64,000 bases of DNA from Octopus sinensis (GCF_006345805.1 NC_043010.1:60450001-60514000), one strand, 5' to 3'; positions 8,071-64,000 are shown, counted from the stretch's first letter. A program made the numbers and translations. The notes: generated from the letters alone by a model not told the origin.

Positions 8071-8135
8071 TTATGAAAGAGTCCTAATAAATATACCAAT
8101 TAAAATAGCATTCTAAATGTTTCTTTTAACTTCAG

Positions 8136-32783: not shown

Positions 32784-33334
32784 TGCTCCAAAGTTGGCAA
32801 TGGAAGTACTTCGAATTTTTTAAGCAACATTATTTAAACACCGTTAATGAAATGTTAGTAAAAAAAGAAGAAAGGAAACAAAGAACTTATGGAGCTTCTC
32901 TGAATTTCTTTTTAGCATTTTATAAAGACTTTTTTTTTTTCGATTTATGAATAAAACTTTTTTTGATTATCAAACTATGAAATATTAACAAGTTTTCTTT
33001 TTAGCAATTAATAAAGAATCCTCCCTTTTTTGTTTTATAAAAAAGGATTATCAAGCATTGTTAGAAATTCACAAAATATCAGTCAAAACTCATAAGGTAT
33101 ATCAGAAATTAATATCATTACTCACTCTTTGCCTTTACATGTAAATATCCATATTGAAAACATTTTCCTAAATTAATTTTGCAACAATATAAAATTAGAA
33201 ATCAAAGGAGACGAATTTTACGATCTTTCATCGACGGCGAAGAGCGTCTGCTGAGGGAACGCAGACGACGAATGTTGCAGGGGAGATGACTCTTGAGTTC
33301 TTAAAATTCCACATCGTTTTCAAAATATTAATAT

Positions 33335-35554: not shown

Positions 35555-35639
35555 TATTTAGCAGAGGGTTTCGAGCGTTGGTACTTATCAAACTTATCAA
35601 GTTTGATAAGTACCAACGCCCGAAACCCTCTGCTAAATA
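35555..35639. repeat. Apex of a large palindrome (41-bp arms, 3-nt loop ATC)
   Basis: TATTTAGCAGAGGGTTTCGAGCGTTGGTACTTATCAAACTT-ATC-reverse complement, one mismatch. Confidence 0.95.
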
Positions 35640-39949: not shown

Positions 39950-42440
39950 GACTGTACTGCACTGGCAATTACATTGGAACTTTATGCAGAAAATTTTAAG
40001 CAAAAGATAATAAAAGATTCTGTTCCAAAGAAGGGTATTTTAAATATTAATGTGTACATGTGTCAAATGTTAATAAAAATCAACTATAGTTTTCTAAACT
40101 ATTAACATCTCGTAATAAAAAATATACAGGGTTTAGATATAACAAAATGGACAAAGAGTTCATATTTTAACTATAATTTATCCTTCAGTTTATTTCTAGC
40201 TTGTAGATAGAAATTTTAAAATAAATCATTTAGATTTGCTAGAGAATTTTTTGTACCTTCTTTATTAATGTTACAGTTCTTCAGATTATAGTGTCTGTCA
40301 CAATTCACTGATCATTATTCTGTTTACTTTTTTAGCTTGTGGTGCAATAATTAATAATGATGTTGGACATAATGGGGATGTTACATTCTATTATTAGAAG
40401 ACACTTTGACAAAGAAACATCTGTTGTATATCATGACCTGGAATCATCTCTGTTAAAGACTAAGAAACAGTTCTCTGTCAAAGTAACTGATGTCAATGAT
40501 GTAGAACCACATTTTACCAAAGAGACATTCCAATTCCTCACCTATGAAAACCAGAAAGTTGATTTCCCTATTGGCTTCATCAATGCTACAGACCCTGATC
40601 TTGGAGATGGAGGCCAACTTACATATTCTATCATCAAGGAAAATAATAATGATAACATTCCTTTCCAACTGACAAAATATGGATTCATTTCTACATCACA
40701 ATCAATAGATCGAGAAATGAAAGACATCTATAAGTTCAAGGTTTTAGTGAAAGATAATGGAACACCTTCTCTCAATGACACTGCCAATATTGTTATTGAG
40801 ATTCTAGATAAAAATGATAATGCTCCGTATTTTACGTTTCCTAATAATGACCCTTACAATCTAGATGTCCACTACCATCCACACAGTAAGAAGGACATCA
40901 CAATTCTGAAAGCATCTGACAAAGACACTGGAAACAATGCTTTCCTCACATATGGAATACTGAGATCCATCATCATCATCATTTCATGTCGGTTTTCCAT
41001 GCTGGCATGGGTTGCACAGTTTGACAGGAGCTATCTGTTTTGGCTGGATTTCTACAGCTGGATGTCCTACTTAGTACCAACCACTTTACAGAGTGTGCTG
41101 GGTGCTGAACTTACACGCTGATGTGTTATATTTCTCAGACAATTTACCAAAATGTTTCAGAAACATATGAGCTGACCTTAGCAAGTGATGTAATAGCACT
41201 GCTAACACAATAGAACATGGTATTGACTTAAAAAAACATTTACTCTACTTTGTAATATATTGTGGTTGCATAACAAAATACCATGTTCTTAAAGTCTTTA
41301 ATATTAGCTGGAGTTTATAGTGGTACTCCAGTTCAATCAGCAACAACTGCTATCATACTAACACTGTTTGTTAGTAATGTTACATCTTCAATGTTGACTG
41401 CTGTGCCATTCCAGTCTGGTCACGACCTGAATATGACTTGGATAATTATCATTGTAGCAGCAGCTGTAATAGTATCTGTGGCTATTGTAGTGTCCATAAC
41501 ACTGTGTGTTTTCAGATGTATTAATCACACAAATAACGCACCTACAACAGCAGAGAATCCCAACTTTCTCTCTCAGACTGAGATGAGACAATTGCAAGAA
41601 ATGCAGAAGAGATATTTAACTGAAATCTTCAGACAATAGAGTTTAAAAGTCAGTTTTTTCTGGAGATGGAACAGACACCAGATGAGAGGAAATTCTGAAC
41701 AACACAGAGGAGACTTCTCACCTGTTCCTCAGGTAAATATCATTTTATGTCTCTGATATCCTTTTGATTTTAAATGCAAAAGTATTTTAGTGATTATTCA
41801 CACATGTTCAAATATTTATATAAATTATCAATTTTAGAAACTCATGTGTATGAGCAGTTTTATTCCTTTGCTTAAAATTTATTGTTTATCTGTGACTTTC
41901 TGAATTAATTATTCATTTTTGTTTAGTGATACTTAAACAGTTTCAATGCCTATTATAGAAATACAACACTTTTTATATAATGACTGTTTTATTAGGTAAG
42001 ATCTAGATTTGTATCAATATAATTTTTTATCTTTTCTATAATCAACTGAGATATGTTTCTATCCATAGTCGAGAAGGTCACATCAGTTCCAACCTGTCTA
42101 ACTACAACAGTGACACCTTAACATCCCAAAAGGACAGAGAAGCTAGCAAGAGTAATGGCAAGACTAAACCATATGATGAGATACCTGCAGAACCAGGTAA
42201 CTTTTATCGAAACATAACATATAAATGTAATTGCCTTTATTACTGTAGGACAATATATAATGTTATGCTTAGTGTAATATAAGATCAATGTTTCTATCTT
42301 TATATATTGGAGTTGTTATATTGAAATGTAATTTGTGTTTGTATATTTGATATTTTGCAGAATATACCAATGACAATCCAGTGGCAGCCACAATACTAAA
42401 GGGACAGCAAATACAAGATACCTTTCTACAGCCAACATAG
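39950..42440 (+). pseudogene. Protocadherin pseudogene (psi-Pcdh-B)
   Basis: Decayed EC2-EC4 traces (IKDSVPKKGILNINV, NVNKNQL*FSK, NNDVGHNGDV then a frameshift to HFDKE). Intact EC5 block 40471-40968, RTE-tail insertion at 40969, 131-bp insertion at 41175, 10-nt deletion near 41320, deletion near 41595, exon-2 acceptor AG changed to TG near 42047. Terminal exon 42361-42440 intact apart from Y to F. Confidence 0.88.
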
Positions 42441-43289
42441 TAGATGTTCCATGACTATTGTTAAATGATTCTCTCACATACCAAATTTTATACAATACTT
42501 TATATTCATATAAAAATATCAACTTTATTTTTCTTTCACACATCACACAAAACATGCCTTTAATGTGATTTACATCTCTGATACATGAAATACTACAAAT
42601 ACCCTTCTGTATATTATCATTGATGACAGTATATTGGGCTCATTGTATGTTATATTTAAATTGCTAAGCTCCTGTTTTAGTGTAATTCTAATTTCTATAT
42701 TTACTTCATCCATTTGTAGCATAAAACAACATAAAAGTTTTGCTATTATATCATTTAACTAATGATCTTAATCTCAAATGTTGTAATCTGGTAGAATGAA
42801 TCACACACATGCATGCACACAGTTCACAGATTCAGATTCAAGTTATTATTTCTTTATTCTAGAATTAGAACGTGTAAATACAATATATTATAATAATGAT
42901 ACACAAAATTTAATGAATGAATTTTTAAAACTGTTTGTTTATGCAATTAAAACGTTTAATAAACATTGATTTGAATTTATTTTATTAGTTTTGTTATATC
43001 AGGAAATGATTAGAGTGTTGGATTTACTTTTGTTGCCCATTTTGTTCACATTATTATACAGTATTTCCTCTTCTTACCCTAAGTCTTAACAGTTCATGAT
43101 GTTATAATAGTCTCAACCAAATACAGAATATTTTTCAGTATTTAAACTCTCATACAATCAGAATTATACTCTTAACACTAAATATCAGATTTGTTTTTTA
43201 GTAAGCCCTAAATACGTAATATGATAATGTGATCTTATGAAAATCATGAATCTACTTCAGTGTAAAGTGAGTTCTCTTGTTCGATGTGT

Positions 43290-47156: not shown

Positions 47157-49559
47157 ATGAATGGAAATATCATTTACCTGGTGTGTTTGCTACAATTACG
47201 ACAGTCTCTTGTACTGTCCATAGATATTACATACCATGTCAAGGAAGAAGGCAGTCCTCACACCTATATAGGAGACATTGCTGTTGACTCCAACTTATCA
47301 TACCCTCTCACACATCAACAACACACTCTCATTACATTTACACAACTACAAAGGACAGTTGAAAGTGGTTCTCACTTATTTAATGTCACCAACTCAGGAA
47401 AACTATACACTACTCAAACACTGGATGCTGAGTCTCTGTGTACATACAACAAGGAATGTTCCAGAATTGTTAAAGTAGCAGTAAGGGAAAATAAAAGATT
47501 TCTGAAGATCCTGAAGGTGAAAATAATAATAGAAGACATCAATGATCATTCTCCAGAATTTTCTATTGATAAAATCACTGTTAAATATACTGAAGATAGT
47601 TTTAAAGGAACCAGAAGGATAATTCCATTTGCCATAGATAGGGATATAACCATCTTGAATTCCCAAATTTCATATAAAATAATGGCTAGTCAAAGAGATC
47701 CATTTTCTTTGTACATGAAAAAACAAAATGATGGTGCCTTCATACCTCAACTTATTCTTGAAGAAACATTAGACAGAGAAGTCAAAGACTCATATATGTT
47801 GACCCTGGAAGCTAAAGATGGAGGGAACCCTCCCAAAACAGCTACACTCAAGGTACACATATCTGTGACAGACGTCAATGATAACACACCTGTATTTTCA
47901 CAGAAAGTCTACAATGTCTCTATAAGCAATTCACATCAAAGACATTTACCAATTCTTACTTTAAAAGCAACAGATAGAGATTCTGGACACAATGGAAAGA
48001 TTTCTTACCATTTCAACCATAAAACTCCCATTCTGTTCCAGAAATATTTTTTATTAAAGAGAACTAATGGTGAGATATATTTAAAAGATAATTTTAGTTT
48101 TGGTGGAAAACATACATACAAATTATACATTGAAGCACAAGATGATGGGAGTCCCTCCCTAAGTTCTGTAACAATGGTACAGATTCACGTAATTAGTAAC
48201 CAAAATTCTGCTCCCATGATAAATATAGATTTTGTATCTCCTTTATCAGAGAGTTCCACAGCAGTTTCAGAAGACAGTGAAGTAGATAGTTTTATAGCTT
48301 ATGTTATGGTCACCGACAATGATAGTGGACCTAATGGTGAGGTTAGCTGTGATTTAAAACATGATAAATTTAAACTTGCCAAAATGGATTCTAAAGAATA
48401 TAAAATAATTGTTAAGGGCCACCTTGACAGAGAAATAAGGGACCATTATAAAGTATCTGTTGTGTGTCGTGATATGGGGTCACCTCAACTAGAAAGTAAA
48501 AAATATTTCTCTGTCAAAGTAACTGATGTCAATGATGTAGAACCACATTTTACCAAAGAGACATTCCAATTCCTCACCTATGAAAACCAGAAAGTTGACT
48601 TCCCTATTGGCTTCATCAATGCTACAGACCCTGATCTTGGAGATGGAGGCCAACTTACATATTCTATCATCAGTGATAACAACAATGATAACATTCCTTT
48701 CCAACTGACAAAATATGGATTCATTTCTACATCACATCCAATAGATCGAGAAATGAAAGACATCTATAAGTTCAAGGTTTCAGTGAAAGATAATGGAACA
48801 CCTTCTCTGAATGACACTGCCAATATTGTTATTGAGATTCTAGATAAAAATGATAATGCTCCGTATTTTACGTTTCCTAATAATGACCCTTACAATCTAG
48901 ATGTCCACTACCATCCACACAGTAAGAAGGACATCACAATTCTGAGAGCATCTGACAAAGACACTGGAAACAATGCTTTCCTCACATATGGAATACTGAG
49001 ATCCAATGATAAAAACCTGTTTACAGTGAACTCACACACTGGTGTGTTATCTTTCTCTCGCACAGTTTACCAAAATGATGCAGGAACATATGAGCTGCAG
49101 TTTATAGTGAAAGACGGTGGTACTCCAGTTCAATCAGCAACAACTGCTATCATACTAACACTGTTTGTTAGTAATGATACATCTCCAATGTTGACTGCTG
49201 TGCCATTCCAGTCTGGTCACGACCTGAATATGACTTGGGTAATTATCATTGTAGCAGCAGCTGTAATACTATCTGTGGCTATTGTAGTGTCCATAACACT
49301 GTGTGTTTTCAGATGTATTAATCACACAAATAACTCACCCACAACAGCAGAGAATCCCAACTTTCTCTCTCAGACTGAGATGAGACAATTACTGTATCAG
49401 ACCAACAATCCTGTTGCAATAACGAGAAATGCAGAAGAGATATTTAACCGAAATCTTCAGACAATAAAATCTAAAAGTCAGTTTTTTCTGGAGATGGAAC
49501 AGACACCAGATGAATGGAAATTCTCAACAACACAAAGGAGACTTCCACCTGTGCCTCAG
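47157..49559 (+). CDS. Protocadherin C, large coding exon
   Basis: 813-aa ORF with signal peptide, six EC repeats, C-x5-C in EC1 and TM. Acceptor CTAG|AAATAT at 47120/47121; phase-0 donor CAG|GTAAAT at 49559/49560. Confidence 0.95.
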
Positions 49560-49935
49560 GTAAATATTATTTTAAACAATTCTATGGCATATTTTTGAAA
49601 CATTCATCAAAATATATTTGAAATCTCTTATTTTATATACATGTTATGTTCTTTATGCCTTCTCCATAAAACATAATGGCTCTTTCATATTTTTACAATT
49701 TACAGAATTCATAAATCTAAAATTTCCATATATTTCATTAAACTAGTATCTCTGTTTTGTTTATTGTCTACTCCAAGTTATTTTCATTAACTAAGACTGT
49801 CTTCAATTATACTGTTTCTGCTCATTTTAAAAGCATTCCTCTCTTGTGTCTTACCAGAAACATTCTAGAATACAAATATATATGTTTCTTCTTTTTAACA
49901 TTATGCTTCACTCTGCTTTTTTTTCTAATCACCAG

Positions 49936-50080
49936 AGATGTGATTCAATCCATAGTCAAGGACGTCGTACCAGTTCCATCATGTCTTACAACAGTGACAC
50001 CTTAACATCCCAAAAGGACAGAGAAGCTAGCAAGAGTAATGGCAAGACTAAACCATATGATGAGATACCTGCAGAACCAG
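49936..50080 (+). CDS. Protocadherin C, cytoplasmic exon 2
   Basis: Acceptor TTTTCTAATCACCAG, 145 nt open (RCDSIHSQGRRTSS...KPYDEIPAEP), donor CAG|GTAACT in phase 1. Confidence 0.85.
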
Positions 50081-50244
50081 GTAACTTTTATCAAAACATA
50101 ACATATAAATGTAATTGCCTTTATTACTGTAGGACAATATATAATGTTATGCTTAGTGTAATACAAGATCAATGTTTCTATCTTTATATATTGGAGTTGT
50201 TATATTGAAATGTAATTTGTGTTTGTATATTTGATATTTTGCAG

Positions 50245-50324
50245 AATATACCAATGACAATCCAGTTGCAGCCACAATACTAAAGGGACAACAAATACAA
50301 GATACCTATCTACAGCCAACATAG
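50245..50324 (+). CDS. Protocadherin C, terminal coding exon
   Basis: Acceptor ATATTTTGCAG; (E)YTNDNPVAATILKGQQIQDTYLQPT*. Predicted spliced protein is 875 aa. Confidence 0.85.
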
Positions 50325-51229
50325 TAGATGTTCCATGACTATTGTTAAATGATTCTCTCACACACCAAATCTTATACAATACTTTATATTCATATAAAAA
50401 TATCAACTCTATGTTTCTTTCACACATCACACATAAAGGGCCTTGCAGGGCATCTATTATGACCCTTGATTTACATCTCTGATACATGAAATACTACAAA
50501 TACCCTTCTCTATATTATCATTGATGACAGTATATTGGGCTCATTGTATGTTATATTTAATTTGCTAAGCTCCTGTTTTAGTGTAATTCTAATTTCTATA
50601 TTTACATCATCCATTTGTAGCATAAAACAAAATAAAAGTTTTGCTATTATATCATTTAACTAACGATCTTAATCTGGAGGTTCTGCAGAATGTTGACATA
50701 TCTTGTAGTATCCACACCATCTGAGAGGAGAGTAACAATAAATTTAGCATAATTTGAAGTAAAGTGAAATTTAAATGAAATATTATCAGATCTAGTGTTG
50801 AATTTCGATTTAGTAAATCTTAAGAATACTCCCCAAATTAAATACATTCCTACACTAAACACTTTTAGTTTGTCCATTAAAATGTAGCTATATGAATATT
50901 TCATATAAATAATAAAATACAATTTTTATGCAGCATTTTGCTTAATTTACATTTACTGTTGTCACCTAATAGCTGTTGTTTAGATTTCTTTTTGCCACGT
51001 TTGTAGCAACGATGTCTATTTCTTTAACTAACATTGAATTTTTTGTTGTTACAAGGATCTTTTTATTGCTAGGATATACTATAATCTGTTTAATATTAAA
51101 AAATAAGTAATAACAGAACTAAATAGGATACTCCTCGATTAATCACACTATCTATAAAATATATGAATGATAATTGCACATAATTCATCAAACAGCCTCT
51201 GTTTAACATCAATTCTCTTATTTGATGTG

Positions 51230-51621
51230 TTTGTGTGACACAGACAACATTGCAGTAATTTCCTATTGGATGAGAGAGATTTTCTATATTTCTTTCAATA
51301 TTGAAAGTGAGGCTGATAGCTTTTTTCTTTGTTCATCATACACACAATTGTGTGTGTGTGTGTGGAGGACATAGAGTTGTAACTAGCACACACCAGCATC
51401 TGGCTAACATCTCACCTCCCACTACATACAGCAACTGTCACACTATTATATCAGCAGTTACACAGGAACAGCAGCAGCAGCTGCAGTAACACAGGAACAC
51501 TACTACAACAGCAGCAGTACCACTATAATACCACTACAGCAGCAGCAGTTGGAGTGGAACACTACAGCAGGATACACATCATCCATCACACACAACTACA
51601 GTGAAGGATTAAACAATGCAG
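51230..51621 (+). promoter_or_regulatory. Candidate promoter and non-coding first exon of Pcdh-D
   Basis: Paralog of 43290-43686; TCAGCAGTTACACAGGAACA at 51451-51470; donor ATGCAG|GTAAGT at 51621/51622. Confidence 0.6.
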
Positions 51622-51748
51622 GTAAGTCTCTCTCTCGCTTTCTCATCTTTTCATATCCTTTATAATTATATTGTATGTGTTTCTAATGTACGACAGGGTA
51701 ATGCTACAATCTAAAATGTCCACCATGTTGTGTGTGTGTGTATATATT

Positions 51749-51780
<32 letters not shown>

Positions 51781-52911
51781 GGGACTGGGACAGTGGAGGA
51801 TAGAGAGATCAAGCCATCACTTCCACCATTAACATTAGCAACATTGGTGGTAGTAGTAGTAGTAGTGGTGGTGGTGGTAGTAGTAGTAGTTTGTCCCCTT
51901 ATTTTTAAAACACACACATAATATATACACCTTTATTTGTAAAATAACCATATGAATCTGTCCACAACCAGAGAATTTACCTTCAATTAATTCCATACTG
52001 TCTTCTAAATATTCTTTTAAACATTTTCGTAAATAGTATTGGTGTAATATACTTTAAATAAGAGAAGTGTGTTTCATTACATGTTGTAAAACATTTATTG
52101 ATCTGCCAATAATATAGAGTTGAGTTTTATGAATTCGTTTCAGTGTGTTTGGATTATAACACTTCTTTAATAAAGATAATCTCTCTTAAAAAGATTTACA
52201 TGATTAGATATTTACAATAATAATAAGAATATGAAGCATCTTATTTTACCACATTTAACTATTAAAGAAACATTGTGTGGAGATTTACATCCAAGATGGT
52301 GGAAGATGATAGAAATTAACCCGGAAATAACAATTTGAAATAGAATTAAGATGAATGTTTAATGTCAAATTTTCTGTGCTATATTTTTATCTCATAAGAA
52401 TTTTGGCAGACTTTCTGCTGTATATTGGTTTGCAAGAACCTTCTCTTTTCCTATTAATTGTTGAATCTTTCAGTATTTATTTTTTATTGGAACTATTATT
52501 TGTTTTCTACTAATCTGTTGTAAAATAAAAGTTTCTTGTAGTTCAGTTCACATCTTTCATTTGAAACTGTCTCCTTTAATTTGGAAGCATTCTAATATTT
52601 ATTTTAACTCTAAAAGTCTTAATTTCATTTAAAGAAAGCAATTAAAGATTTGATTCATATTATGGTCAGAATGTAGGCCAAGATAATCCAAAGACCTCAT
52701 TTGCAGCAACGAAACAATGCTTACATTAATGTAATATATTTCACTTGTGAAAATGTATTCCATCAATGGCCTTCATGTCCTTCCTTACAAACAGAAACAC
52801 AAACTAAAATTTCAAAACGAAATACGAGGAAAATTGTAAAATTATTGATAGATTAATCTGTGAGAAAGATTTGTGAATTGTTCATTGATTATTACTGCAT
52901 TCCTTTTCCTC

Positions 52912-53293
52912 TTTATTTGTTTCAGTCATTTGACTGCGACCATGCTGGAGCACTGTATTAAGTCAAACAAATCGACCCAGGACTTATTCTTTGTAAGCCT
53001 GGTACTTATTCTATCGTCCCTTTTGCCGAACTGCTAAGTTATGGAGACATCAACACTCCAGCATTGGTTGTCAGGCAATGGTGGGGGGACAAGCACAGTC
53101 ACACAAACACACACACACACACACATCTATATACGACAGGCTTCTTTCAGTTTCTGTCTATCAAATCTACTCATAAGGCTTTGGTTGTCCCAAGGCTATA
53201 GTAGAAAACACTTGCCCAAGGTGCCACACAGTGGGACTGAACCCAGAACCATATGGTTGGTAAGCAAGCTACTTACCACACAACCACTCCTGC
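52912..53293 (-). mobile_element. SINE family A, full length
   Basis: Reverse complement of the 7005-7406 element. Confidence 0.85.
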
Positions 53294-56200
53294 AGTTCAA
53301 TTGTAATGCATTTTTGGTAGATTGCTGTATGTATCTGACATTTCATTAGCTAGTCTCTCATATCATTAATTATATATCTTCTAGTCTCTACTAGAAATCC
53401 ACCTCTGCAATACCTATTTATTTTGAATACATGTCTACATGTCCATAACTTCACTATTTATGCACATGCATTGCTATTTAAAACTCTTGAATTTAAAGTC
53501 TCTAATAAACATCATACTTCACCAGAAACTCACATTAGCATCAACATTAATGTTACATGTTTAATGTTCCATTATATTATATTAAAAGTTTTCATTTTAT
53601 GTATGTAGTAATCACTAATTGTTCAGTGCCAACATACTGATGCAAATATGTCAGTAAGAATGCTAGAAAGTCTATGTTATTGCAATTATTTGGCTGTTCA
53701 GAAATTAGATTTCATTTTCCTTTATTATTTATTCAATCCTTTTCTCTTTTTTTTATTGTCTCTGATATTTGTCTGTCTTCTGAGTTCAAATTCTGCTGAG
53801 GTCAACTTTGCCTCTCATCCTTTTGGGGTCAATAAATTAAGTACCAGTTGTGTACTGGGGATGATCTAATTAACTGGCCCCCTTCCCCAAGATTTCGGGC
53901 CTTGTGCTTAGAGTAAAAAAGAATATTGTCTCTGATATTAGAGTGTTGCTATTTTGTATTCTTATGTTAATTTCAGCCATCATTTCTATCAAACCTTTAT
54001 CTCACTGGACATAGAGTCACAACATAAACACCACTAGATTTTAGACCAGGGTAAACATATTGGTAGACATAAACAAACACATACCCATATAAACACACAC
54101 ACACATACTTATATCATCTTCATTTTTGTCAGCCTCCCATTGCTAGCATGGTTTGGATGGCTTGTCACAGACTTAGTCAAATCCTGTTTCAGATCAGAGA
54201 CCATTCCTCTTGTCTCACTCATGCATTCCATTTCTGGCATGTTTTATAAGATTGAATGTCCTTTCTATTTTGCCAACCAATATTCTGGGTGCATTTTATC
54301 ATGGCATCAGTGCTAGTGACATTGTCTTGTCACCAAGGATACCTCCAGTATTCCCAAGGTGTGTGCAGCATTGTCCTTTAAGGATGTGGACCAATGATTG
54401 TGCTTTTCTCTTGTGTAGAATATGTGCTGCGTGAATTGTATTATTTTGTTGAGTGGTGATTGTGTTTTTTGTTGTGTAGTGTGTGTATGTGTGTCTGTGT
54501 GCTAGTTGTTTGTATGGCAGTAATAAGTTTCAGTTGTATAGAGTGAGTTGTTGGTGTTATACAATTGTATGTACCAGGTATGGTATGAGGAGAGAGAGTT
54601 ATAATCCAAAGTGTGTCCTCTTGAAACACATTTGCTTATTTCAGTATTTCAAAGTTATATCTGGATGCTATATTTGTGTGAGATATGCATAAGAGTTGAA
54701 AATACTGGGAAATATTTTTCACTGAGTAATTACATATCAAAACAGAATATTGGAAACCAACATTTTTTTTCTTCTTAATCTCCTGTTTTGATATAGCATA
54801 TATAGTATGTACATAAAGTGTTCCTGGAAGCATGAAGATAGTTCCAATCTGTTGCTGTAAGAATGGGAACACGTGTCTTCAGTCCTGCAGAGTGCTTCAG
54901 CTTCAATGATTTTTCCACAAACCTGAGAGTAAACATCAAATATTTGTACAACATGTCAGCCAAGTAGTGCTCTGTTGACATGTACATATTCATTCTGGTA
55001 GAAACTAAATTTAAGGGAAGAATGAAATAGTTTTTCATTGTTTTATGAACTTTCCCTCATTGTTTTGTTTGGCAAAATATTTACTTTTGGTTATTTCAGA
55101 ATCTTTATCTTCAACTATCTATTTTTGAGTGCCATAGACCTTTATTGTAGTATTAGTTGTACAAGTTGCTCTATCAGTAATTCTATGTCAATAAGAGCCC
55201 ACAGTTTTCCAACATTGCATTGTTGATTTTCAGTTATTTAGGAGTATCTTTAATTTCATTGAGTAATGATGGTGTTTAGTATTACATTGTGTTATTTGGT
55301 GTTGATTCTATAGACTATGAATCTTGTGTTATTATATTTTGTACTTATTGTATTGTATATGTGCTGGTGTACTGTATAAGTTGTGCTATAGGATTCAAAG
55401 TATTTGTGTAGGATGTAGAAAGTGCTACACAAAGTTACCTTGTGAACTGTGTGTAATGTTGTAAGCCATGGTGTGACTTGTATATTTTTGTCCATTTTAA
55501 ACAAACCTAGTATTTTAATTATCATTGGTACTGTTTTTTATTTTCAGGCTGATATCTTTCTATTTTGACTATTTTCCCACTATGATTTAGACAATGTTTT
55601 TGTCAGAAGAGATTTCTCACTCTTATTAATACTTTTGTAATTTATGGTTTAAGAAACATCTAGTGTTTCTTCTTAAAATGCTGAGAGGTTAGAGAGGGTC
55701 TCTTTTCAGCATGTGCTTTTATGCTAGAGAGACCAGCATGGAGTAAGTACTAACTCTTTCTATTTAAGGTAATTCTCGGTCTATAATGTTAGGTAATTGG
55801 CCCTAGGTAGCTGTGCACCCCTTATTGATGTGTCTCATTTCATTCCTTTTGTGTACTGTTGTTTTCAATGCCATTTTTTTCTGCAATAGATTTTGTGATA
55901 TTCCTTATGGGGCCCCTTTATTCTGTTACTCCTTTGTAATTTTTCCTTTATCCATTGTCCAAGCATGCACTGAGGTTGTAATATCTCCTGCAATTCCTTA
56001 ATTAAAAGCAAAAAGGTGTAATACTTTTTGTCAGATACATTTTAGCCCAGCTCATCTCTTTGACCACTGAACCAAGCCTGTAGATGGAAGTTCTATATTG
56101 GCATTCTATAAAGGATTAGCAGAGGCCAAAAGGGACAATGTACTTGAGAAAATTCTGAGCATCAGTGAAAATCAATTGGCAGATCTCTTCTGGAGGACTT

Positions 56201-57699
56201 TCAGGACAAGTTCCATGAATAACTCTCAGAAATGCCTGGTCTGACAATGCCACCCGTAGGTGAGCACATTGCTGCTTTGAGATAATTTCCACAGACATGG
56301 AAGTGCCATCACATGTTAGTTCCATGATCAGGTGGTCTGACTGAAATGGCTGAAGACCAACACCTTCCCCTTTTTGCCAAGTCCTCATCAACATTTTCAA
56401 GTTTCACTTGAAAAAGAAAATGAGTGTTGAGAGAGAAGTGTTGCCCCTCCAGGAAATTTGTTGAAAGATGGATGTGAGTGATGAGTATGGTCTGAGGGAA
56501 CAGGTCTGCTTTGAGTATGCACCTGTGGACTAGAGGACAGCTGGGTAAAGGTGCTTTGCTTTTGTTTTCAGAGTGACCCATGCTGTTTGAAGTGTTTCTA
56601 AAAGCAGGTCTTTGAATTGTATATTTTTTGCTTATGTTGTTTACCTTATACAGTATCTATGTCACCTGACAATGTGTTGTCCTGTCCCTTCCTTAATCTT
56701 GTCTGTCAACTATTTGTAGGTAATAAAGAAAATCAATTATTACTGTAATTAATCGGGTGGTGAGCTGACAAAATCATTTGTGTGTCTCACAAAATGCTTA
56801 TTCGCATTTCTTCCGGGTTTTTATGTTCTTAATTAAAAACCCATTGAGGTTAAATCTGTTTTTTCTTCTTTCAGAGTCAATAAAATAAAAGTATCTGTCA
56901 TTTACTGGGGGTCAATATTCTTGACTAAACCCTAGCCTTAAAATTGCTGGCCTTGTGCCAAAATTTGAAACTATTATTATGACGATGATGATAATGAAGG
57001 CAGGCAAGTGTCAGATTTGTTAGCACACTGGACAAAGTACTTCATGGCATTTCTGGATTTGCATTCAGATTTCAGATTCCACTGAGGCTGACGATTGATT
57101 TTGTCTTTCACTCTTCCAGTGTTGATAAAATAGGTAGTCAAGCACTGAGATCGATGTAGTCGACTACCCCACCCCCTCCCACGAAATTTTTGCTTTCATG
57201 CCTTTAGTAGAAGGGAATATTCTTGTTGGTGTATGGCAAATATTCTGAATTCAACTCCTGCTCAGGCCAGATTGTTTTTCATCCCTGTGGGGTGGGGGTG
57301 GGGCCAGTAAAACAGCACCCGTCATCCACTAAGACTTGATATAATCCACCTATTTTTTTTTTCTCTCTAGTTTCAGCTCAGAGCTGTGGCCATGCTGATG
57401 CACTGCCGTTATATACTTTCTCTCCATAAATATTTTGCCTTGTGCCTATGATACAAACAGTTGTCATTATTAGTTAGTTCTAATAAGAAAAGACTCATTA
57501 TTTCTTTTTAATTCCCACTTCATCAGTATATCAGCCATTTTTGGCTATATGTATATCCCTTCTGTTGATTTTTTTATGTTAATTACAATCAGGTGTAAAA
57601 GAATGATATTCATTTCATCACCTTCACTGTTTGCCTTTTCTACATCCATGGAACTCTGTTTATGAATTAGTTAAACAATTTTGCATCTCATTAATGTAT

Positions 57700-60004
57700 T
57701 GTATCAGATTGCCAGAAGGAAAGCTAGGAGATAGGTTTACTTAGCCAGAGGGAAAACAGATAAAAAATTCTGCATCATGAAGACCAAAGACTTGAAGTGT
57801 TTAGTGTTGCAAGACTGTTTTGAGAGAGAATCATGATGTCATAGGAGAGACTTGGAGATGCCACTATGAAAGGTTGCTAAATGAAGAGAATGAATGGGAA
57901 AAAGAGTCTATCAATTGTCAACCAAACAGAGGGACCAGCTATCCAAATTGACAGTACCTTGGTAGATAAAGCAATTAAGGGTATGAAGATAGGGAATGCC
58001 CCCAGCCCATCAGGAATCACCACAGAGATGCTTAAAATATCTGGCAGTGTTGGCTATAGTCTAGTCAGTCGTATAGTTAGTCAGGTGATACATGAAGGAG
58101 TCATACACAATGGCTGGTGTAGCAGCACCATAGTCAACTGCTACAAAGGTAAATGCGATGCATTGGATACAAATAATTAGAGGTATCAAGTCGTTGGTTC
58201 AGGTAATGAAAGTTACAGAAAGGGACATAGGGTGAGAGTTAGTTTAGATGAAATGCAGTTTGGGTTTGTGCCAGGGAAAAGTACCACTTATGCTATATTT
58301 CTGGTAAGATAGCTGCAGGGGAAATACCTAGCCAAAGATAAACCTCTGTACTTGGCTTTTGTTGACATGGAGAAAGCCTTTGACAGTGTCCCCCGATCCC
58401 TTATCTGGTGGTCAGTGCAAAAACTAGAGATGGATGAGTGGTTAGTGAGAGCTGTACAAGCCATGTACAGGGGTGCTGACAATAAGGTGAGGGTTGGCAA
58501 CAAGTATATTGAAGAATTCCATGTAGGAGTAGGGGTCCACCAAAAATCAATCCTCAGCCCTCTCTTATTTATCATAGCCCTCCAGGCAATAACAGAGAAA
58601 TTCAATACAGGCTGCCTCTGGGAGTTTCTCTGTGTTGATGACCTTGCTCTAATAGCTGAGTCACTATCAGAACTAGAGAAGTTTCATGTGTGGAAGTAAG
58701 GTCTAGAATCGAAGGGCCTTAGAGTCAATCTAGCAAAAACCAAAGTCTTAATAAGTAGGAAGGCAGACAAATCACAAATCCCTCCAGGTAGATGGCCCTG
58801 CTTGATTTATAGAAAAGGCATAGGTAGAAACTCCATAAGATGTACCTGGTGTAAGCTATGGACACATAAGAGGGGCAGCAATATCAAAAGAAGGCTAACT
58901 GAGAAGATAGTTTTTGTGTGGCAAATGCTCAGGGGCAACAAACACTGAAGATGTTCAGAAAACAGCTTCTGTCACTTGCTAGGGGGAAAAACTAGAAGTA
59001 GTTGATAGCTTCCATTATCTAGGTGGTCAAGTCAGTTGCAGGGCTGGATGCTCTGAGAGTGTAGCTGCGACAATAAGAATAATCTGGGCAAAGTTCAGAG
59101 AACTCCTACCTCTGCTGGTAACAAAGGGCCTCTCTTGCTCAGAGTAAAGGGTAGACTCTATGGTGCATGTGTGTGAACAGCCATGCTACACAGCAGTCAA
59201 ACATGGGCTATGACTGCTGAGGACATGCATAAGCTTGCAAGAAATTAACTTAGTATGCTCTGCTGGATGTGTAACGTCAGTGTGTATACACGACAGAGTG
59301 TATCGCCCTGAGAGAAAAATTGGACATAAGAAACATCAAATGTGGTGTGCAAGAGAGACGAATGTGCTGGTATGGTCATGTGCTGCATATGGATGAAGAC
59401 AGCTGTGTGAAAAAGTGTCACATCCTAGCAGTAGAGAAAACCTGTGGAAGTGGTAAACCCAGGAAGACGTGGGATGAGGTGGTGAAGTACAACCTTTGAA
59501 CATTGGAACTCAAGGAGGCAATGATGAGTGACCGAGACCTTTGGAGATATGCTGTGCTTGAGAAGACCTGGCAAGCCAAGTGAGACCATAACGTTGCCTA
59601 TGCCAGTGCAGCACAATCGGCCCATTTAAGAATACCCTTCAATTACTGGGCAATAAATGGTGCTTTCGAAGACCTGTTGAGTCAAGTGAAGTCATTGTCG
59701 TGCCCGATGCCAGTACCACCTGAGTGGCACTCGTGCTGGTGGTACGTAAAGAGCACCATTCGAGCGTGTTCGATGCCAGTGCTGCCTAACTGGTTCTGTG
59801 CTGGTGGTACATAAAAAGCACCATTCAAGCATGGTCGTTGTCAGACTGGCCCTCGTGCCGGTAGCACATAAAAAGCACGCACTACACTCTTGGAGTAGTT
59901 AGCATTAGGAAGGGCATCCAGCTGTAGAAACTTTTGCCAGATCAAACTGTCCAACCCATGCCAGCATGGAAAGCGGACGTTAAACGACGTTGAGCAGGAT
60001 GATG
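57700..60004 (+). mobile_element. 5'-truncated RTE-like LINE in the 5' intron of Pcdh-D
   Basis: Same family as 8907-11359: AFVDMEKAFDSVP, GVHQKSILSPLLFII, LCVDDLAL; 3' UTR repeats and GGACGTTAAACGA end; multiple stops. Confidence 0.85.
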
Positions 60005-60289
60005 TATAAAATTTTTGAAAGAACGCTTCAGATGAGTATTGTTTACAACGTCTAGGGGAGATAACTCTAATGTAAATCCGGACTATTTCTTCACACTAAC
60101 AGGAACACATAAAAACTTACTTTTAATGACTTTCTTTCACAATTTTCAAATATATTTCTATTGTATAGTACTCCAAGGTTTATATTTGATGAACTTTCAT
60201 GTCAAATTTTTTCTTTAAGCTGGTATTAAATAATTTCTATTATATTTGTAGAAATATTCAATAATAATGAAGAATGAAGAGTTGCAATC

Positions 60290-62686
60290 ATGAATGAAAA
60301 CGTTTTTTACTTGGTGTGTTTGCTATATATAAAACAGTCTGTTGTAATGTCTGTAGACATCACCTACCACGTCAAGGAAGAAGACAGACCTCACACCTAT
60401 ATAGGAGACATTGCTGTTGACTCCAACTTATCACACCCTCTCAAACATGAGCAACGCGCTCTCATTACACTTACACAACTACAAAGGACAGTCGAGAGTG
60501 GTTCTCACTTATTTAATGTCACCAACTCAGGAAAACTATACACTACTCAAACACTGGATGCTGAGTCTCTGTGTACATACAACAAGGAATGTTCCAGAAT
60601 AGTTAAAGTAGCAGTGAGGAAAGGAAAAACTTTCATGAAGATTTTGAAGGTGAAAATAATAATAGAAGACATCAATGACTATTCTCCAGAATTTACGGAT
60701 GATGAAATAGGTATCAAGTTTGCAGAAGATAGTCTGAAAGGAAATCAGAAAAAAATTCCATATGCTATAGACAGAGATATTACCATCATGAATTCCCAAA
60801 TTTCATATAACATAAAATATCATAAAAGAGAACCATTTTCTTTGTATATGGCAAAAGATAATGATGGTGTTTTTACACCTGAACTGACTTTAGAAGACAA
60901 ATTAGACAGGGAAGTAAAAGATTTGTATATATTGACCTTAGAGGCTAAAGATGGTGGGAACCCTCCCAGAACAGGTACACTCAAGGTACGCATATCTGTG
61001 ACAGATGTTAATGATAACACACCTGTATTTTCACAGAAACTCTATAATATCTCTATAAATAATTCACATCAAAGACATTTACCAATTCTTACTTTAAAAG
61101 CCACAGATCAAGATTCTGGAGACAATGGAAAGATTTCTTACCATTTCAACCATAAAACATCTCAAAATATCCAGAAATATTTTGTATTGGATAAGAAAAC
61201 TGGAGATTTATTTTTACATGATAATTTTTACTTTAGTAAGATGCAGTCTTTATTTATAGAAGCAAGAGATGGTGGGAATCCACCTCTAACGTCGGTAGCC
61301 AGAATTCACATTTATGTAATTAATAACCAAAACAATGTTCCGTTGATAAATATAGATTTTGTGTCTCCTTTAACAGAGAGTTCCACTGCAGTTTCAGAAG
61401 ACAGTGAAGTAGATAGTTTTATAGCTTATGTTATGGTCACTGACAATGATAGTGGACCTAATGGTGAGGTTATCTGTGATTTAAAACATGATAAATTTAA
61501 ACTTGCCAAAATAGATTCTAAAGAATATAAGATAATTATTAAGGGCCATCTTGACAGAGAAATAAGGGACCACTATAAAGTATCTATTGTGTGTCATGAC
61601 ATGGGGTCACCTCAACTAGAAAGTAAAAAATATTTCTCTGTCAAAGTAACTGATGTCAATGATGTAGAACCACATTTTACCAAAGAGACATTCCAATTCC
61701 TCACCTATGAAAACCAGAAAGTTGACTTCCCTATTGGCTTCATCAATGCTACAGACCCTGATCTTGGAGATGGAGGCCAACTTACATATTCTATCATCAA
61801 TGATAACAACAATGATAACATTCCTTTCCAACTGACAAAATATGGATTTATTTCTACATCACAACCAATAGATCGAGAAATGAAAGACATCTATAAGTTC
61901 AAGGTTTTAGTGAAAGATAATGGAACACCTTCTCTCAATGACACTGCCAATATTGTTATTGAGATTCTAGATAAAAATGATAATGCTCCGTATTTTACGT
62001 TTCCTAATAATGACCCATACAATCTCGATGTCCACTACCATCCACACAGTAAGAAGGACATCACAATTCTGAGAGCATCTGACAAAGACACTGGAAACAA
62101 TGCTTTCCTCACATATGGAATACTGAGATCCAATGATAAAAACCTGTTTACAGTGAACTCACACACTGGTGTGTTATCTTTCTCTCGCACAGTTTACCAA
62201 AATGATGCAGGAACATATGAGCTGCAGTTTATAGTGAAAGACGGTGGTACTCCAGTTCAATCAGCAACAACTGCTATAATACTAACACTGTTTGTTAGTA
62301 ATGATACATCTCCAATGTTGACTGCTGTGCCATTCCAGTCTGGTCACGACCTGAATATGACTTGGGTAATTATCATTGTAGCAGCAGCTGTAATACTATC
62401 TGTGGCTATTGTAGTGTCCATAACACTGTGTGTTTTCAGATGTATTAATCACACAAATAACTCACCCACAACAGCAGAGAATCCCAACTTTCTCTCTCAG
62501 ACTGAGATGAGACAATTACTGTATCAGACCAACAATCCTGTTGCAATAACGAGAAATGCAGAAGAGATATTTAACCGAAATCTTCAGACAATAAAATCTA
62601 AAAGTCAGTTTTTTCTGGAGATGGAACAGACACCAGATGAATGGAAATTCTCAACAACACAAAGGAGACTTCCACCTGTGCCTCAG
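60290..62686 (+). CDS. Protocadherin D, large coding exon
   Basis: 809-aa ORF with the same architecture as C. Acceptor TTTGTAG|AAATAT at 60251/60252; phase-0 donor at 62686/62687. Confidence 0.95.
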
Positions 62687-63146
62687 GTAAATATTATTTT
62701 AAACAATTCTATTGTTTGATAGCATTTTTGTATAACATTCATGAAGACATATTTTAAATATCTAGTTTTATTTACATGTTATGTTCTTTATATTTTCTCA
62801 GTGCCCTTTTTGATAGTTTTACATTTTGCAGATGTCTTAAATTTAAAATTTCCAAATATTTTATTAAAGTAGTATCTTTGTTTTGTTTACTCCAAAATAT
62901 TTTAATTTGCTTAGTATGTAAATATAATAGATCTAAAATTTTCACATACTTCATTAAATGAGTTTTCCGTTTTGTTTATCACTTCTCCAAGTTCTTTCTA
63001 TTAACTTAGTAGATCTTTAAAATTACATTATTTCTGCACATTTTAACAGCATTCCTTCCTCGAGTCTTACTGGAAACATTCTAGAATATAAATGCGAATG
63101 TTTCTTTGATTTAACATTATGTTTCACTCTGTTTTCTAATCACCAG

Positions 63147-63291
63147 AGATGTGATTCAATCCATAGTCAAGGACGTCGTACCAGTTCCATCATGTCTTAC
63201 AACAGTGACACCTTAACATCCCAAAAGGACAGAGAAGCTAGCAAGAGTAATGGCAAGACTAAACCATATGATGAGATACCTGCAGAACCAG
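63147..63291 (+). CDS. Protocadherin D, cytoplasmic exon 2
   Basis: Appears identical to 49936-50080, including splice sites. Confidence 0.85.
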
Positions 63292-63455
63292 GTAACTTTT
63301 ATCAAAACATAACATATAAATGTAATTGCCTTTATTACTGTAGGACAATATATAATGTTATGCTTAGTGTAATATAAGATCTATGTTTCTATCTTTATAC
63401 ATTGGAGTTGTTATATTGAAATGTAATTTGTGTTTGTATATTTGATATTTTGCAG

Positions 63456-63535
63456 AATATACCAATGACAATCCAGTGGCAGCCACAATACTAAAGGGAC
63501 AACAAATACAAGATACCTATCTACAGCCAACATAG
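63456..63535 (+). CDS. Protocadherin D, terminal coding exon
   Basis: Matches 50245-50324 except one synonymous change (GTG/GTT). Predicted spliced protein is 873 aa. Confidence 0.85.
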
Positions 63536-64000
63536 TAGATGTTCCATGACTATTGTTAAATGATTCTCTCACACACCCAATATTTTACATTGATTTAAAG
63601 CATTAATATGATATTTACCACTCATAAAGCTTTCATTGTCATTGATATTGAGCCCTAATTAACACTAAATAGTACAAATATTGTCCTGTATAACCATCAT
63701 TGGCTTATTTAAAACAGTTGACACCACTCGTTTGTTATGGCTTCATATAACATTAAATGTTACTGCATTTTACTCTACAAAGTATGAAAAATAAAAAAGC
63801 CTGGTCAGGAATTGTCAGATGTTGTTACATAAACAAACAATTATTATAGTTCCACTTATATTAATTAAGCTTCTGATTGTTAATTTTCCCTTTTAGATTT
63901 ATAATTTTCATTTGTATAACAGAAAAACCTCCTGGAGCTAACCAGCAAAATACAATTACACATTATTTAATGTTCCTTTCATGATATAATTTGCCCATAC

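What the first reader, a model, noticed from the sequence alone, without database searches (positions are those of the whole stretch)
47157..63580. Variable ectodomain tip plus constant stalk and tail, achieved by concerted evolution instead of shared exons
Seen: C and D differ substantially in the signal peptide and parts of EC1, EC2 and EC3. From the start of EC4 (~48225 / ~61352) through EC6, TM, both tail exons, the last intron and the proximal 3' UTR they are almost identical, while the first ~250-330 nt of the intron after the large exon is more diverged. Known: vertebrate Pcdh-alpha/gamma obtain a constant tail by splicing to shared exons. Inference: a convergent variable/constant receptor design in which each gene keeps its own homogenised constant copy.
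Basis: partly seen in the sequence, partly recalled or inferred. Interest (0 to 1): 0.72.

Follow-up and report, generated by a model that had tools for sequence, protein, structure and literature searches.

The report
Octopus protocadherin genes homogenised by gene conversion
Two neighbouring octopus protocadherin (neuronal cell-adhesion) genes keep different EC2-EC3 domains but near-identical stalk, membrane and tail parts because neighbouring copies repeatedly overwrite one another there, a pattern already well known from fish protocadherin clusters.

Summary
The window is Octopus sinensis chromosome CM016872.1. Genes C and D are intact three-exon, six-cadherin-repeat protocadherins.

C and D differ at 189 of 1060 bases in the 5' part of exon 1 and at 21 of 1343 in the 3' part. 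The break lies at C 48217-48239, the EC3/EC4 junction (p<=0.0005). Exon 2, intron 2, exon 3 and 54 nt of 3'UTR differ at 7 of 443 bases. Most of intron 1 and both flanks are barely alignable.

Synonymous divergence drops tenfold (dS 0.42 to 0.04), so protein-level constraint alone does not explain the identity. All seven sampled O. sinensis paralogs show the same profile, as do an independent O. vulgaris assembly and Argonauta hians.

In EC3, C groups with Argonauta genes (bootstrap 86-91), apart from D. From EC4 onward every gene groups by species (100). This is regional concerted evolution, best explained by short-tract interlocus gene conversion.

- The EC1 core is also homogenised.
- No positive selection appears at domain or 25-codon scale (dN/dS 0.3-0.45).
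- Tail-exon homogenisation is absent in Argonauta.
- Vertebrate variable exons undergo the same EC4-EC6 homogenisation (teleosts).

Verdict: a new member of a known kind, of moderate interest.

The parts
47157..48216 (+). Gene C exon 1, variable part: signal peptide, EC1, EC2, EC3
   Evidence: 189 mismatches in 1060 nt against D. dS is 0.22 in EC1, 0.61 in EC2 and 0.49 in EC3. EC3 groups with Argonauta genes P0024 and P0025, bootstrap 86-91.
47284..47470 (+). Homogenised EC1 core inside the 'variable' part (approximate limits)
   Evidence: Mean identity among 7 paralogs is 97.5% in the bin 47284-47433. C and D are fully identical in the 100-nt bin starting at C 47365. pS is 0.04-0.09 at aa 45-94.
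48217..49559 (+). Gene C exon 1, homogenised part: EC4, EC5, EC6, transmembrane segment, membrane-proximal cytoplasmic region
   Evidence: 21 mismatches in 1343 nt against D. dS is 0.14 in EC4, 0.03 in EC5, 0.04 in EC6 and 0.00 in TM+cytoplasmic. Breakpoint at 48217-48239.
49560..49935 (+). Gene C intron 1. Not homogenised except about 25 nt at the 5' end and 36 nt at the 3' end
   Evidence: GT/AG boundaries. The middle 315 nt has 66 mismatches and 99 gap columns against D. Length ranges from 147 to 1552 nt among paralogs, and identity is at background.
49936..50378 (+). Gene C homogenised tail block: exon 2 (49936-50080), intron 2 (50081-50244), exon 3 with stop codon (50245-50324), first 54 nt of 3'UTR
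   Evidence: 7 differences in 443 nt against D. Among 7 paralogs exon 2 is 98.9%, intron 2 98.7%, exon 3 99.0% and UTR 1-60 96.7% identical. Intron 2 is 164 nt in all seven.
60290..61343 (+). Gene D exon 1, variable part: signal peptide, EC1, EC2, EC3
   Evidence: Counterpart of C 47157-48216. Orthologous to O. vulgaris D: 135 orthology-pattern sites against 0 species-pattern sites.
61344..62686 (+). Gene D exon 1, homogenised part: EC4 to the cytoplasmic region
   Evidence: The D model equals NCBI protein P0001.
62687..63146 (+). Gene D intron 1 (460 nt), diverged from C and carrying an insertion of roughly 64-88 nt relative to C
63147..63589 (+). Gene D homogenised tail block: exon 2 (63147-63291), intron 2 (63292-63455), exon 3 (63456-63535), 54 nt of 3'UTR
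2808..5207 (+). Gene A exon 1, a more distant paralog (equals P0039). It carries one sharply bounded conversion patch at 4185-4664, covering EC5
   Evidence: The patch is 92-100% identical to C and D in a 55-75% background. EC5 dS is 0.05-0.08 against 0.33-1.7 elsewhere. A's own tail exon lies at 8133-8297.
40419..42774 (+). Gene B, a truncated copy lacking EC1-EC3. It keeps an EC4/EC5 fragment (40419-40969), exon 1 3' remnants (41106-41732), exon 2 (42049-42196), intron 2 (42197-42360), exon 3 (42361-42440) and 3'UTR
   Evidence: Against C: the EC4/EC5 fragment is 95% identical, intron 2 98.8%, exon 3 96%, UTR 92%.

Best explanation
C and D belong to a tandem, same-strand array of three-exon protocadherin genes in Octopus sinensis. 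I call this array subfamily S1, defined by the tail sequence RCDSIHSQ.

Shown:
- The array evolves in concert, region by region.
- Homogenisation acts on two separate blocks. Block 1 runs from the EC3/EC4 junction to the end of exon 1. Block 2 is exon 2, intron 2, exon 3 and about 55 nt of 3'UTR.
- A further homogenised block covers the EC1 core.
- EC2-EC3, the signal peptide, most of intron 1 and the intergenic DNA escape.
- Homogenisation is nested. The EC5 patch is shared even with the distant gene A. EC5-EC6 is shared between subfamilies S1 and S2. EC4 through the tail is shared within S1 only.

Inferred, mechanism:
- The islands of identity are short and sit in unalignable DNA, so short-tract non-reciprocal interlocus gene conversion is the most likely process.
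- The boundaries stay put for two reasons. Tracts that would erase EC2-EC3 differences are removed by selection. Indel-rich, diverged DNA such as intron 1 blocks heteroduplex extension.

Inferred, function:
- By analogy with vertebrate clustered protocadherins, EC2-EC3 carry homophilic trans specificity.
- The homogenised EC5-EC6, transmembrane segment and tail provide a common cis-association and signalling module.
For: Synonymous divergence and breakpoint:
- C vs D dS is 0.42 in EC1-3 and 0.042 from EC4 to the end. dN/dS is 0.36 and 0.19.
- The breakpoint lies at C 48217-48239, p<=0.0005.

Generality:
- Seven O. sinensis paralogs show the same profile. Mean identity is 0.72-0.90 across EC2-EC3 and 0.97-1.00 from C 48334 onward.
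- O. vulgaris D vs E, from an independent assembly, shows the same profile.
- Three Argonauta hians paralogs do too: EC2-3 dS 0.41-0.82, EC4 to cytoplasmic 0-0.10.

Non-coding DNA:
- Intron 2 is 98.7% identical and exactly 164 nt in all 7 paralogs.
- Intron 1 is 147-1552 nt long and at the 0.76 background identity.

Topology switch:
- EC3 DNA and protein trees group C with Argonauta Ah_a and Ah_b (bootstrap 86-91), and group D/E/F/I with Ah_c (83-85).
- From EC4 on, bootstrap support for the EC3 grouping is 0% and genes group by species: Argonauta vs Octopus 100% in EC4, EC5-EC6 and TM+cytoplasmic; all Octopus S1 genes together 57%, 82% and 100% in those three regions and 100% in the EC5-cytoplasmic protein tree.

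Subfamilies S1 and S2 both exist in Octopus and Argonauta:
- In EC2, EC3, EC4 and the tail, same-subfamily cross-species identity exceeds same-species cross-subfamily identity.
- In EC5 and EC6 the order reverses: 0.93-0.98 within species against 0.87-0.91 between species.
- S1 vs S2 dS within O. vulgaris is 0.06-0.15 in EC5-6. That is below the Octopus-Argonauta dS of 0.20-0.33 for the same region.

Tract and boundaries:
- Gene A carries a 480-nt patch at 92-100% identity in a 55-75% background.
- Breakpoints recur at aa 345-377 in both genera, at aa 434 for S1 vs S2, and at aa 456 for A vs S1.

Recent activity:
- 20 of 52 D_sin/D_vul differences have both alleles present among the other paralogs.
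- In EC5 to the exon end the quartet counts are 2 orthology, 2 species and 1 cross pattern, against 135, 0 and 0 in SP-EC3.

Architecture:
- Pfam finds five Cadherin repeats plus an N-terminal Cadherin_2 domain.
- The protein is colinear with the protocadherin gamma-B4 EC1-6 structure 6e6b, E = 3.5e-91.

Literature:
- The same pattern and reasoning are published for fugu and zebrafish (PMC1852091) and for mouse and Xenopus (PMC4978886).
- Gene conversion has been suggested for cephalopod PCDH arrays in general (PMC9068888, PMC6339937).
Against: - A Sawyer-type longest-run test on polymorphic sites was not significant for C-D (p = 0.19). Because all paralogs are homogenised together, few polymorphic sites remain in the tract, so the test has little power.
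- The rise in GC3, a usual mark of biased conversion, is small: 0.25-0.30 rising to 0.30-0.32.
- In EC2, third-position trees do not recover the trans-species grouping. For C, dS to D in EC2-3 (0.49-0.61) is not larger than dS to its Argonauta relatives (0.60-0.85). The age of the C/D split therefore rests mainly on non-synonymous and all-position signal in EC3.
- No reads, population data or expression data were available.
- The functional split into trans specificity and a cis/signalling module is purely by analogy.
Confidence: 0.85

Rival explanations
1. Recent whole-gene tandem duplication, followed by very fast and possibly positively selected divergence of EC1-EC3. No sequence exchange between copies.
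For: The genes are tandem and closely related. EC2-EC3 have the highest dN, 0.18-0.22.
Against: - dS is also about tenfold higher in EC1-3, and dN/dS is 0.3-0.45, never above 1 in 25-codon windows there.
- Intron 1, the upstream region and the downstream region are at background identity, while the blocks embedded between them are 99-100% identical.
- C's EC3 groups with Argonauta genes.
- S1 and S2 share EC5-EC6 within a species although they split before the Octopus-Argonauta divergence.
Confidence: 0.04
2. Strong purifying selection on EC4 through the tail, including synonymous sites and intron 2. One candidate cause is RNA structures needed for the heavy A-to-I editing reported for cephalopod protocadherin transcripts.
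For: - Editing is reported to be enriched in octopus protocadherins (bioRxiv 10.1101/714394).
- Cross-species dS is lower in EC5-6 (0.20-0.25) than in EC4 or the cytoplasmic region (0.33-0.40). Some synonymous constraint is therefore possible.
Against: - Constraint cannot make paralogs within a species more alike than orthologs between species.
- Intron 2 is 98.7% identical among Octopus paralogs. Against Argonauta it is not alignable beyond about 45 nt, and it varies in length within Argonauta.
- The tail block folds no better than shuffled sequence, z = +0.41.
Confidence: 0.04
3. Unequal crossing-over between misaligned array members created chimeric genes and homogenised the 3' halves, rather than short-tract gene conversion.
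For: Tandem arrays do undergo unequal exchange. Copy number differs between species. Truncated copy B and the frame-broken copies G and H indicate turnover.
Against: A crossover inside exon 1 would also homogenise intron 1 and the whole downstream spacer. These are at background identity. The identity comes as separate islands of 0.45-1.3 kb, and gene A carries an internal 480-nt patch with both flanks diverged.
Confidence: 0.05
4. Assembly or polishing artefact: reads from paralogs were mis-mapped and the consensus was homogenised, or copies were collapsed.
For: The O. sinensis assembly contains frame-broken copies (G, H) that may be indel errors. Repeated gene arrays are hard to assemble.
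Against: - The same profile appears in the independent O. vulgaris assembly GCA_951406725.2 and in Argonauta hians GCA_054771915.1.
- C_sin and the O. vulgaris C protein differ at 1 of 689 residues.
- The blocks still contain copy-specific SNPs.
- Block edges coincide with domain and exon boundaries in three genomes.
Confidence: 0.02

Closest known systems
Regional gene conversion in teleost clustered protocadherin subclusters (fugu Pcdh2-alpha and -gamma, zebrafish; Yu et al. 2007 PMC1852091; Noonan et al. 2004 as cited there)
   Same: - Tandem array of ~2.4-kb exons encoding six EC repeats.
- A low-identity 5' region (EC1-3) and a 3' region with ~99% nucleotide identity.
- A discrete boundary in EC4 or EC5.
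- Homogenisation that is lineage-specific and nested by subcluster.
- EC2-EC3 escape conversion.
   Different: - Here the array arose independently, in a mollusc.
- Each gene is a complete three-exon unit.
- In O. sinensis and O. vulgaris a second homogenised block covers the gene's private tail exons, one whole intron and the start of the 3'UTR.
- The GC3 rise is weak here.
Vertebrate Pcdh-alpha and Pcdh-gamma constant exons (shared by cis-alternative splicing)
   Same: The outcome at protein level is alike: many ectodomains joined to one nearly invariant C-terminal tail within a subcluster.
   Different: There are no shared exons here. Every gene carries its own exon 2 and exon 3 (PMC9068888). 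Tail identity is maintained by DNA-level homogenisation, and not in all octopods.
Mammalian Pcdh-beta cluster
   Same: Each gene is self-contained, with no constant exons and its own short cytoplasmic tail. Paralogs are subject to some gene conversion.
   Different: Beta genes are single-exon. The octopus genes have two extra tail exons and much stronger 3' homogenisation.
Octopod and decapodiform PCDH arrays as described by Albertin et al. 2022 (PMC9068888) and Styfhals et al. 2019 (PMC6339937)
   Same: This is the same gene family and the same kind of chromosomal arrays. [quoted passage not shown]
   Different: In the papers I could read the statement is made at whole-gene tree level. I found no domain-resolved description covering the EC3/EC4 and EC4/EC5 boundaries, the EC1 core or the tail-block island.

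Membership tests
Clustered-protocadherin-type receptor gene (architecture) | Six extracellular cadherin repeats, one transmembrane segment and a short cytoplasmic region | tested here: met
   Pfam finds 5 Cadherin stretches plus an N-terminal Cadherin_2 domain. The protein aligns colinearly with the Pcdh gamma-B4 EC1-6 structure 6e6b, E = 3.5e-91. A hydrophobic segment WVIIIVAAAVILSVAIVVSITLCVF is present.
Clustered-protocadherin-type receptor gene (architecture) | The whole ectodomain and the transmembrane segment are encoded by one large exon; genes lie head-to-tail on one strand | tested here: met
   Uninterrupted ORFs of 2.4 kb for A, C and D on the + strand. Further copies follow downstream on the same strand.
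Vertebrate Pcdh-alpha/gamma organisation | Variable exons spliced to one shared set of constant exons at the 3' end of the cluster | tested here: not met
   Each of C, D, E, F, G, H, I and B has its own exon 2 and exon 3. AG/GT splice sites were checked for C through I. The NCBI model P0001 uses D's own copies.
Vertebrate clustered protocadherins (orthology) | Descent from the vertebrate alpha/beta/gamma cluster | not tested
   The literature treats the octopus arrays as an independent expansion (PMC4978886, PMC9068888). Non-clustered delta-protocadherins score almost as well as gamma-B4.
Regional concerted evolution by interlocus gene conversion | Synonymous divergence sharply lower in one part of the gene than in the rest, with a discrete boundary | tested here: met
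   dS is 0.42 against 0.042. Breakpoint at C 48217-48239, p<=0.0005. Fisher p = 6e-19.
Regional concerted evolution by interlocus gene conversion | In the converted region paralogs within a species are closer than orthologs or subfamily members between species, while the unconverted region keeps trans-species relationships | tested here: met
Regional concerted evolution by interlocus gene conversion | Non-coding DNA inside the tract is homogenised with it, and DNA outside is not | tested here: met
   Intron 2 is 98.7% and UTR 1-60 is 96.7% identical. Intron 1, the upstream region and the region more than 200 nt downstream are at the 0.76 background.
Regional concerted evolution by interlocus gene conversion | Raised GC3 in converted regions (biased gene conversion) | tested here: inconclusive
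   GC3 is 0.25-0.30 in EC1-3 and 0.30-0.32 from EC4 to the end. The direction is right but the effect is small.
Regional concerted evolution by interlocus gene conversion | Significant pairwise tracts by a GENECONV/Sawyer-type test | tested here: inconclusive
   My condensed-run test gave p = 0.19 for C-D. It lacks power when all copies are homogenised together. GENECONV itself was not available.
Diversifying (positive) selection on EC2-EC3, as reported for mammalian Pcdhs | dN/dS above 1 in EC2-EC3 or at sites within them | tested here: not met
   Domain dN/dS is 0.19-0.48. The highest 25-codon window in EC1-3 is 0.57. Codon site models were not run.

The most novel reading that the evidence does not exclude
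The homogenised modules are functionally selected, not just tolerated. On this reading octopods arrived independently at the vertebrate clustered-protocadherin logic: EC2-EC3 as a private trans-recognition code, with the EC1 core and EC4 co-homogenised as a common frame, and EC5-EC6, the transmembrane segment and the tail as a common cis-multimerisation and signalling module. Gene conversion would then be the genomic device that keeps this module interchangeable among dozens of separately transcribed genes, doing the job of shared constant exons. The recurrent EC3/EC4 and EC4/EC5 boundaries in Octopus and Argonauta would be selection-defined.
Probability: 0.35. Interest if true: 0.7.

Novelty: new member of a known kind. 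Interest (0 to 1): 0.45.

Why it matters
Cephalopods and vertebrates expanded protocadherins independently. This window shows that the octopus arrays are shaped by the same domain-specific homogenisation as teleost clusters: EC2-EC3 spared, EC5-EC6 overwritten.

Three consequences follow.

- It gives a concrete, testable prediction for the untested octopus proteins: specificity should map to EC2-EC3, and cis association and signalling to the shared EC5-tail module.
- It is a practical warning. Whole-gene trees of cephalopod protocadherins will overstate 'lineage-specific expansion'. Only EC2-EC3 carry orthology signal, as was learned earlier for fish.
- The contrast between Octopus and Argonauta is a natural experiment on whether a uniform tail matters. 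In Octopus the tail exons and an intron are homogenised. In Argonauta they are not.

Tried and rejected
- Sawyer-type longest-concordant-run test on polymorphic sites: no power, p = 0.19 for C-D. I replaced it with a maximum chi-square scan and a Fisher test on synonymous differences.
- Search for a shared promoter motif by exact 10- and 12-mers within 800 nt upstream of 13 genes. Only the ~45 nt next to the ATG is shared, within the E/F/G/I group. No family-wide element was found.
- RNA folding of the tail block, to test for a structured or editing-related constraint: z = +0.41, nothing.
- DNA look-up of the O. vulgaris C ortholog (P0007) and of P0044: neither is on record. The C ortholog could therefore be compared only as protein.
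- Noonan et al. 2004 (PMC353213) and Albertin et al. 2015 (PMC4795812) are not held. Their content is cited only as reported by PMC1852091, PMC4978886 and PMC6339937.
- cDNA-mediated conversion was considered and rejected, because both introns are retained and intron 2 is co-homogenised.
- My first identification of the species as O. vulgaris was corrected to O. sinensis.

Full report
**What the window is.** The window has three long + strand ORFs of about 810 aa, at 2808, 47157 and 60290. All three translate to six-repeat protocadherins.
- A protein search found gene D identical to O. sinensis 'protocadherin beta-15-like' P0001, and gene A identical to P0039 over exon 1.
- P0001 lies at CM016872.1:60510290. 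The window is therefore O. sinensis chromosome CM016872.1, roughly 60.45-60.514 Mb.
- The orthologous O. vulgaris region (L001) is 98.2% identical in intergenic DNA.
- The array continues downstream for at least 210 kb, with more copies on the same strand.

**Gene structure.**
- C has exons at 47157-49559, 49936-50080 and 50245-50324.
- D has exons at 60290-62686, 63147-63291 and 63456-63535.
- All splice sites are GT/AG.
- The D model reproduces the NCBI protein exactly.
- B (40419-42774) is a truncated copy without EC1-EC3.

**Checking the observation.**
- The 5' 1060 nt of exon 1 has 189 mismatches.
- The 3' 1343 nt has 21 mismatches, and none in the last 408 nt.
- The middle of intron 1 is diverged and full of indels.
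- A second island covers exon 2, intron 2, exon 3 and 54 nt of UTR, with 7 differences in 443 nt.
- Similarity ends at C 50378 / D 63589, and about 51 nt upstream of the ATG.
- A maximum chi-square scan places the break at C 48217-48239, p<=0.0005.

**Is it homogenisation or constraint?**
- NG86 estimates give dS 0.42 in EC1-3 and 0.042 from EC4 to the end. By domain: EC5 0.03, EC6 0.04, TM+cytoplasmic 0.00. dN/dS is 0.36 and 0.19.
- The fall in synonymous differences is highly significant, Fisher p = 6e-19.
- Among seven O. sinensis paralogs, intron 2 is always 164 nt and 98.7% identical, the same as the exons beside it.
- Intron 1 ranges from 147 to 1552 nt and sits at the identity obtained for unrelated DNA, 0.76.
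- Against Argonauta, intron 2 aligns only over its last ~45 nt.
- The tail block has no unusual RNA structure.
- Constraint therefore does not explain the pattern.

**Generality.**
- All seven O. sinensis paralogs share the profile.
- So do D and E in the independent O. vulgaris assembly.
- So do three adjacent Argonauta hians genes: EC2-3 dS 0.41-0.82, EC4 to cytoplasmic 0-0.10.
- This also argues against an assembly artefact.

**The decisive test is the change in tree topology along the gene.**
- In EC3, C groups with Argonauta P0024 and P0025 (Ah_a, Ah_b), with bootstrap 86-91 in both protein and DNA trees. D/E/F/I group with Ah_c at 83-85.
- From EC4 on, those groupings have 0% support and genes group by species. 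Argonauta separates from Octopus at 100% in EC4, EC5-EC6 and TM+cytoplasmic. All Octopus S1 genes form one group at 57% (EC4), 82% (EC5-EC6) and 100% (TM+cytoplasmic) in the DNA trees, and at 100% in the EC5-cytoplasmic protein tree.
- Two subfamilies, S1 (tail RCDSIHSQ...) and S2 (tail IYNKQ...), exist in both genera.
- In EC2, EC3, EC4, the cytoplasmic region and the tail, same-subfamily cross-species identity beats same-species cross-subfamily identity.
- In EC5 and EC6 the order reverses: 0.93-0.98 against 0.87-0.91.
- At synonymous sites, S1 vs S2 within O. vulgaris is 1.2-1.7 in EC2-3 but 0.06-0.15 in EC5-6. That is below the Octopus-Argonauta value of 0.20-0.33.
- Gene A in the window carries a textbook two-sided tract. 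Positions 4185-4664 are 92-100% identical to C and D in a 55-75% background.

**Boundaries and timing.**
- Breakpoints recur at aa 345-377 in 8 of 10 O. sinensis S1 pairs and in all three Argonauta pairs.
- The remaining S1 pairs (two in O. sinensis, plus O. vulgaris D vs E) break near the EC2/EC3 junction.
- S1 vs S2 breaks at aa 434, and A vs S1 at aa 456.
- Paralog dS in the blocks (0.04-0.06) equals the O. sinensis/O. vulgaris ortholog dS of 0.045.
- Quartet site patterns lose all orthology signal from EC5 on: 2, 2 and 1, against 135, 0 and 0 in SP-EC3.
- For 20 of 52 D_sin/D_vul differences, both alleles are present among the other paralogs.
- Exchange therefore continued up to about the split of these sister species.

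**Corrections to the interpretation.**
- The EC1 core is also homogenised. The variable part is essentially the signal peptide, the end of EC1, EC2 and EC3.
- No domain or 25-codon window in EC1-3 has dN/dS above 1.
- In Argonauta the tail exons and intron 2 are not homogenised. The 'constant tail by conversion' is specific to the lineage of the two Octopus species sampled here, not a fixed property of the system.
Fugu and zebrafish variable exons show the same 5'-variable, 3'-99%-identical structure with a boundary in EC4 or EC5. EC2-EC3 escape conversion in mouse and Xenopus as well (PMC1852091, PMC4978886).
- For cephalopods, gene conversion has been suggested at whole-gene level, and the lack of shared final exons is stated (PMC9068888, PMC6339937).
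- I found no domain-resolved description for octopods in the papers available to me.

**Mechanism.**
- Shown: regional, nested, recurrent homogenisation at the DNA level that includes non-coding sequence.
- Inferred: short-tract interlocus gene conversion rather than unequal crossing-over. The identical islands are 0.45-1.3 kb, are separated by diverged intron 1, are flanked by unalignable spacers, and include a two-sided patch.
- Inferred: the boundaries persist through selection against loss of EC2-EC3 diversity, and because diverged, indel-rich DNA blocks heteroduplex extension.
- By analogy only: EC1-EC4 mediate trans recognition, with EC2-EC3 giving specificity, and EC5-EC6 mediate cis association (PMC7811963). 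The protein is colinear with the gamma-B4 EC1-6 structure.

**Verdict.** Its evolutionary explanation, concerted evolution, is well supported. It is a new example, in an independently expanded invertebrate array, of a phenomenon established for vertebrate protocadherin clusters. The added twist is a separately homogenised private tail block in Octopus.

Noticed in passing
window 36191-38193 and 32082-32783 (to about 33334): A 45-nt satellite with 44.8 copies at 84% match. A second, inverted array lies 3.4 kb upstream (16 copies), and 32082-33334 is 95% identical to the reverse of 35637-36901. The long 'ORFs' at 36384-37733, 37006-37764 and 37019-37843 lie inside the satellite and are most likely artefacts of the repeat.
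   Followed up: partly
window 57845-59833 and 9099-11021: A relatively GC-rich repeat (0.45 against ~0.33), present in two copies 80-84% identical. One ends about 450 nt upstream of D's ATG, the other lies downstream of gene A. An ORF fragment at 58352-58699 matches reverse transcriptase RVT_1 (E = 2.4e-8), so this is a decayed retroelement. It is also present at the orthologous O. vulgaris position.
   Followed up: partly
window 60444-60470 (aligned to C 47311-47337), EC1 of gene D: Six substitutions within 27 nt are unique to O. sinensis D. All other paralogs and the O. vulgaris D ortholog carry the family consensus. The protein reads KHEQRALITL instead of THQQHTLITF. This is either a very recent patch from an unsampled donor or a multi-base mutation. 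It lies inside the otherwise homogenised EC1 core.
   Followed up: partly
window 40419-42774 (gene B): A truncated protocadherin copy lacking EC1-EC3, with gaps in exon 1. Its exon 2, intron 2 and exon 3 block is still 90-99% identical to the intact genes, so a probable pseudogene still takes part in the homogenisation.
   Followed up: partly
window 14355-14582: An orphan stretch encodes a peptide 53% identical to the tail of gene A (aa 38-104 of the tail query). I found no large exon near it. It may be a relic tail exon of a lost gene.
   Followed up: no
merged locus L003+L002: copy G spans L003 10017-13175 and copy H spans L003 20899 to L002 3371 (O. sinensis, outside the window): Two array members, G (P0004) and H (P0005), have a disrupted exon 1 reading frame in the assembly. 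NCBI models bridge the disruption with artificial introns. These are either young pseudogenes or long-read indel errors.
   Followed up: no
L001 and L004, E_sin vs E_vul, EC2-EC3: The E 'orthologs' of O. sinensis and O. vulgaris have dS 0.23-0.25 in EC2-EC3, against about 0.045 elsewhere and 1.8% divergence in intergenic DNA. The variable region may therefore also have exchanged sequence with another paralog since the species split.
   Followed up: partly
window 34543-35184 (+): An ORF of 213 aa between the two satellite arrays has no Pfam match. Its origin is unknown.
   Followed up: partly
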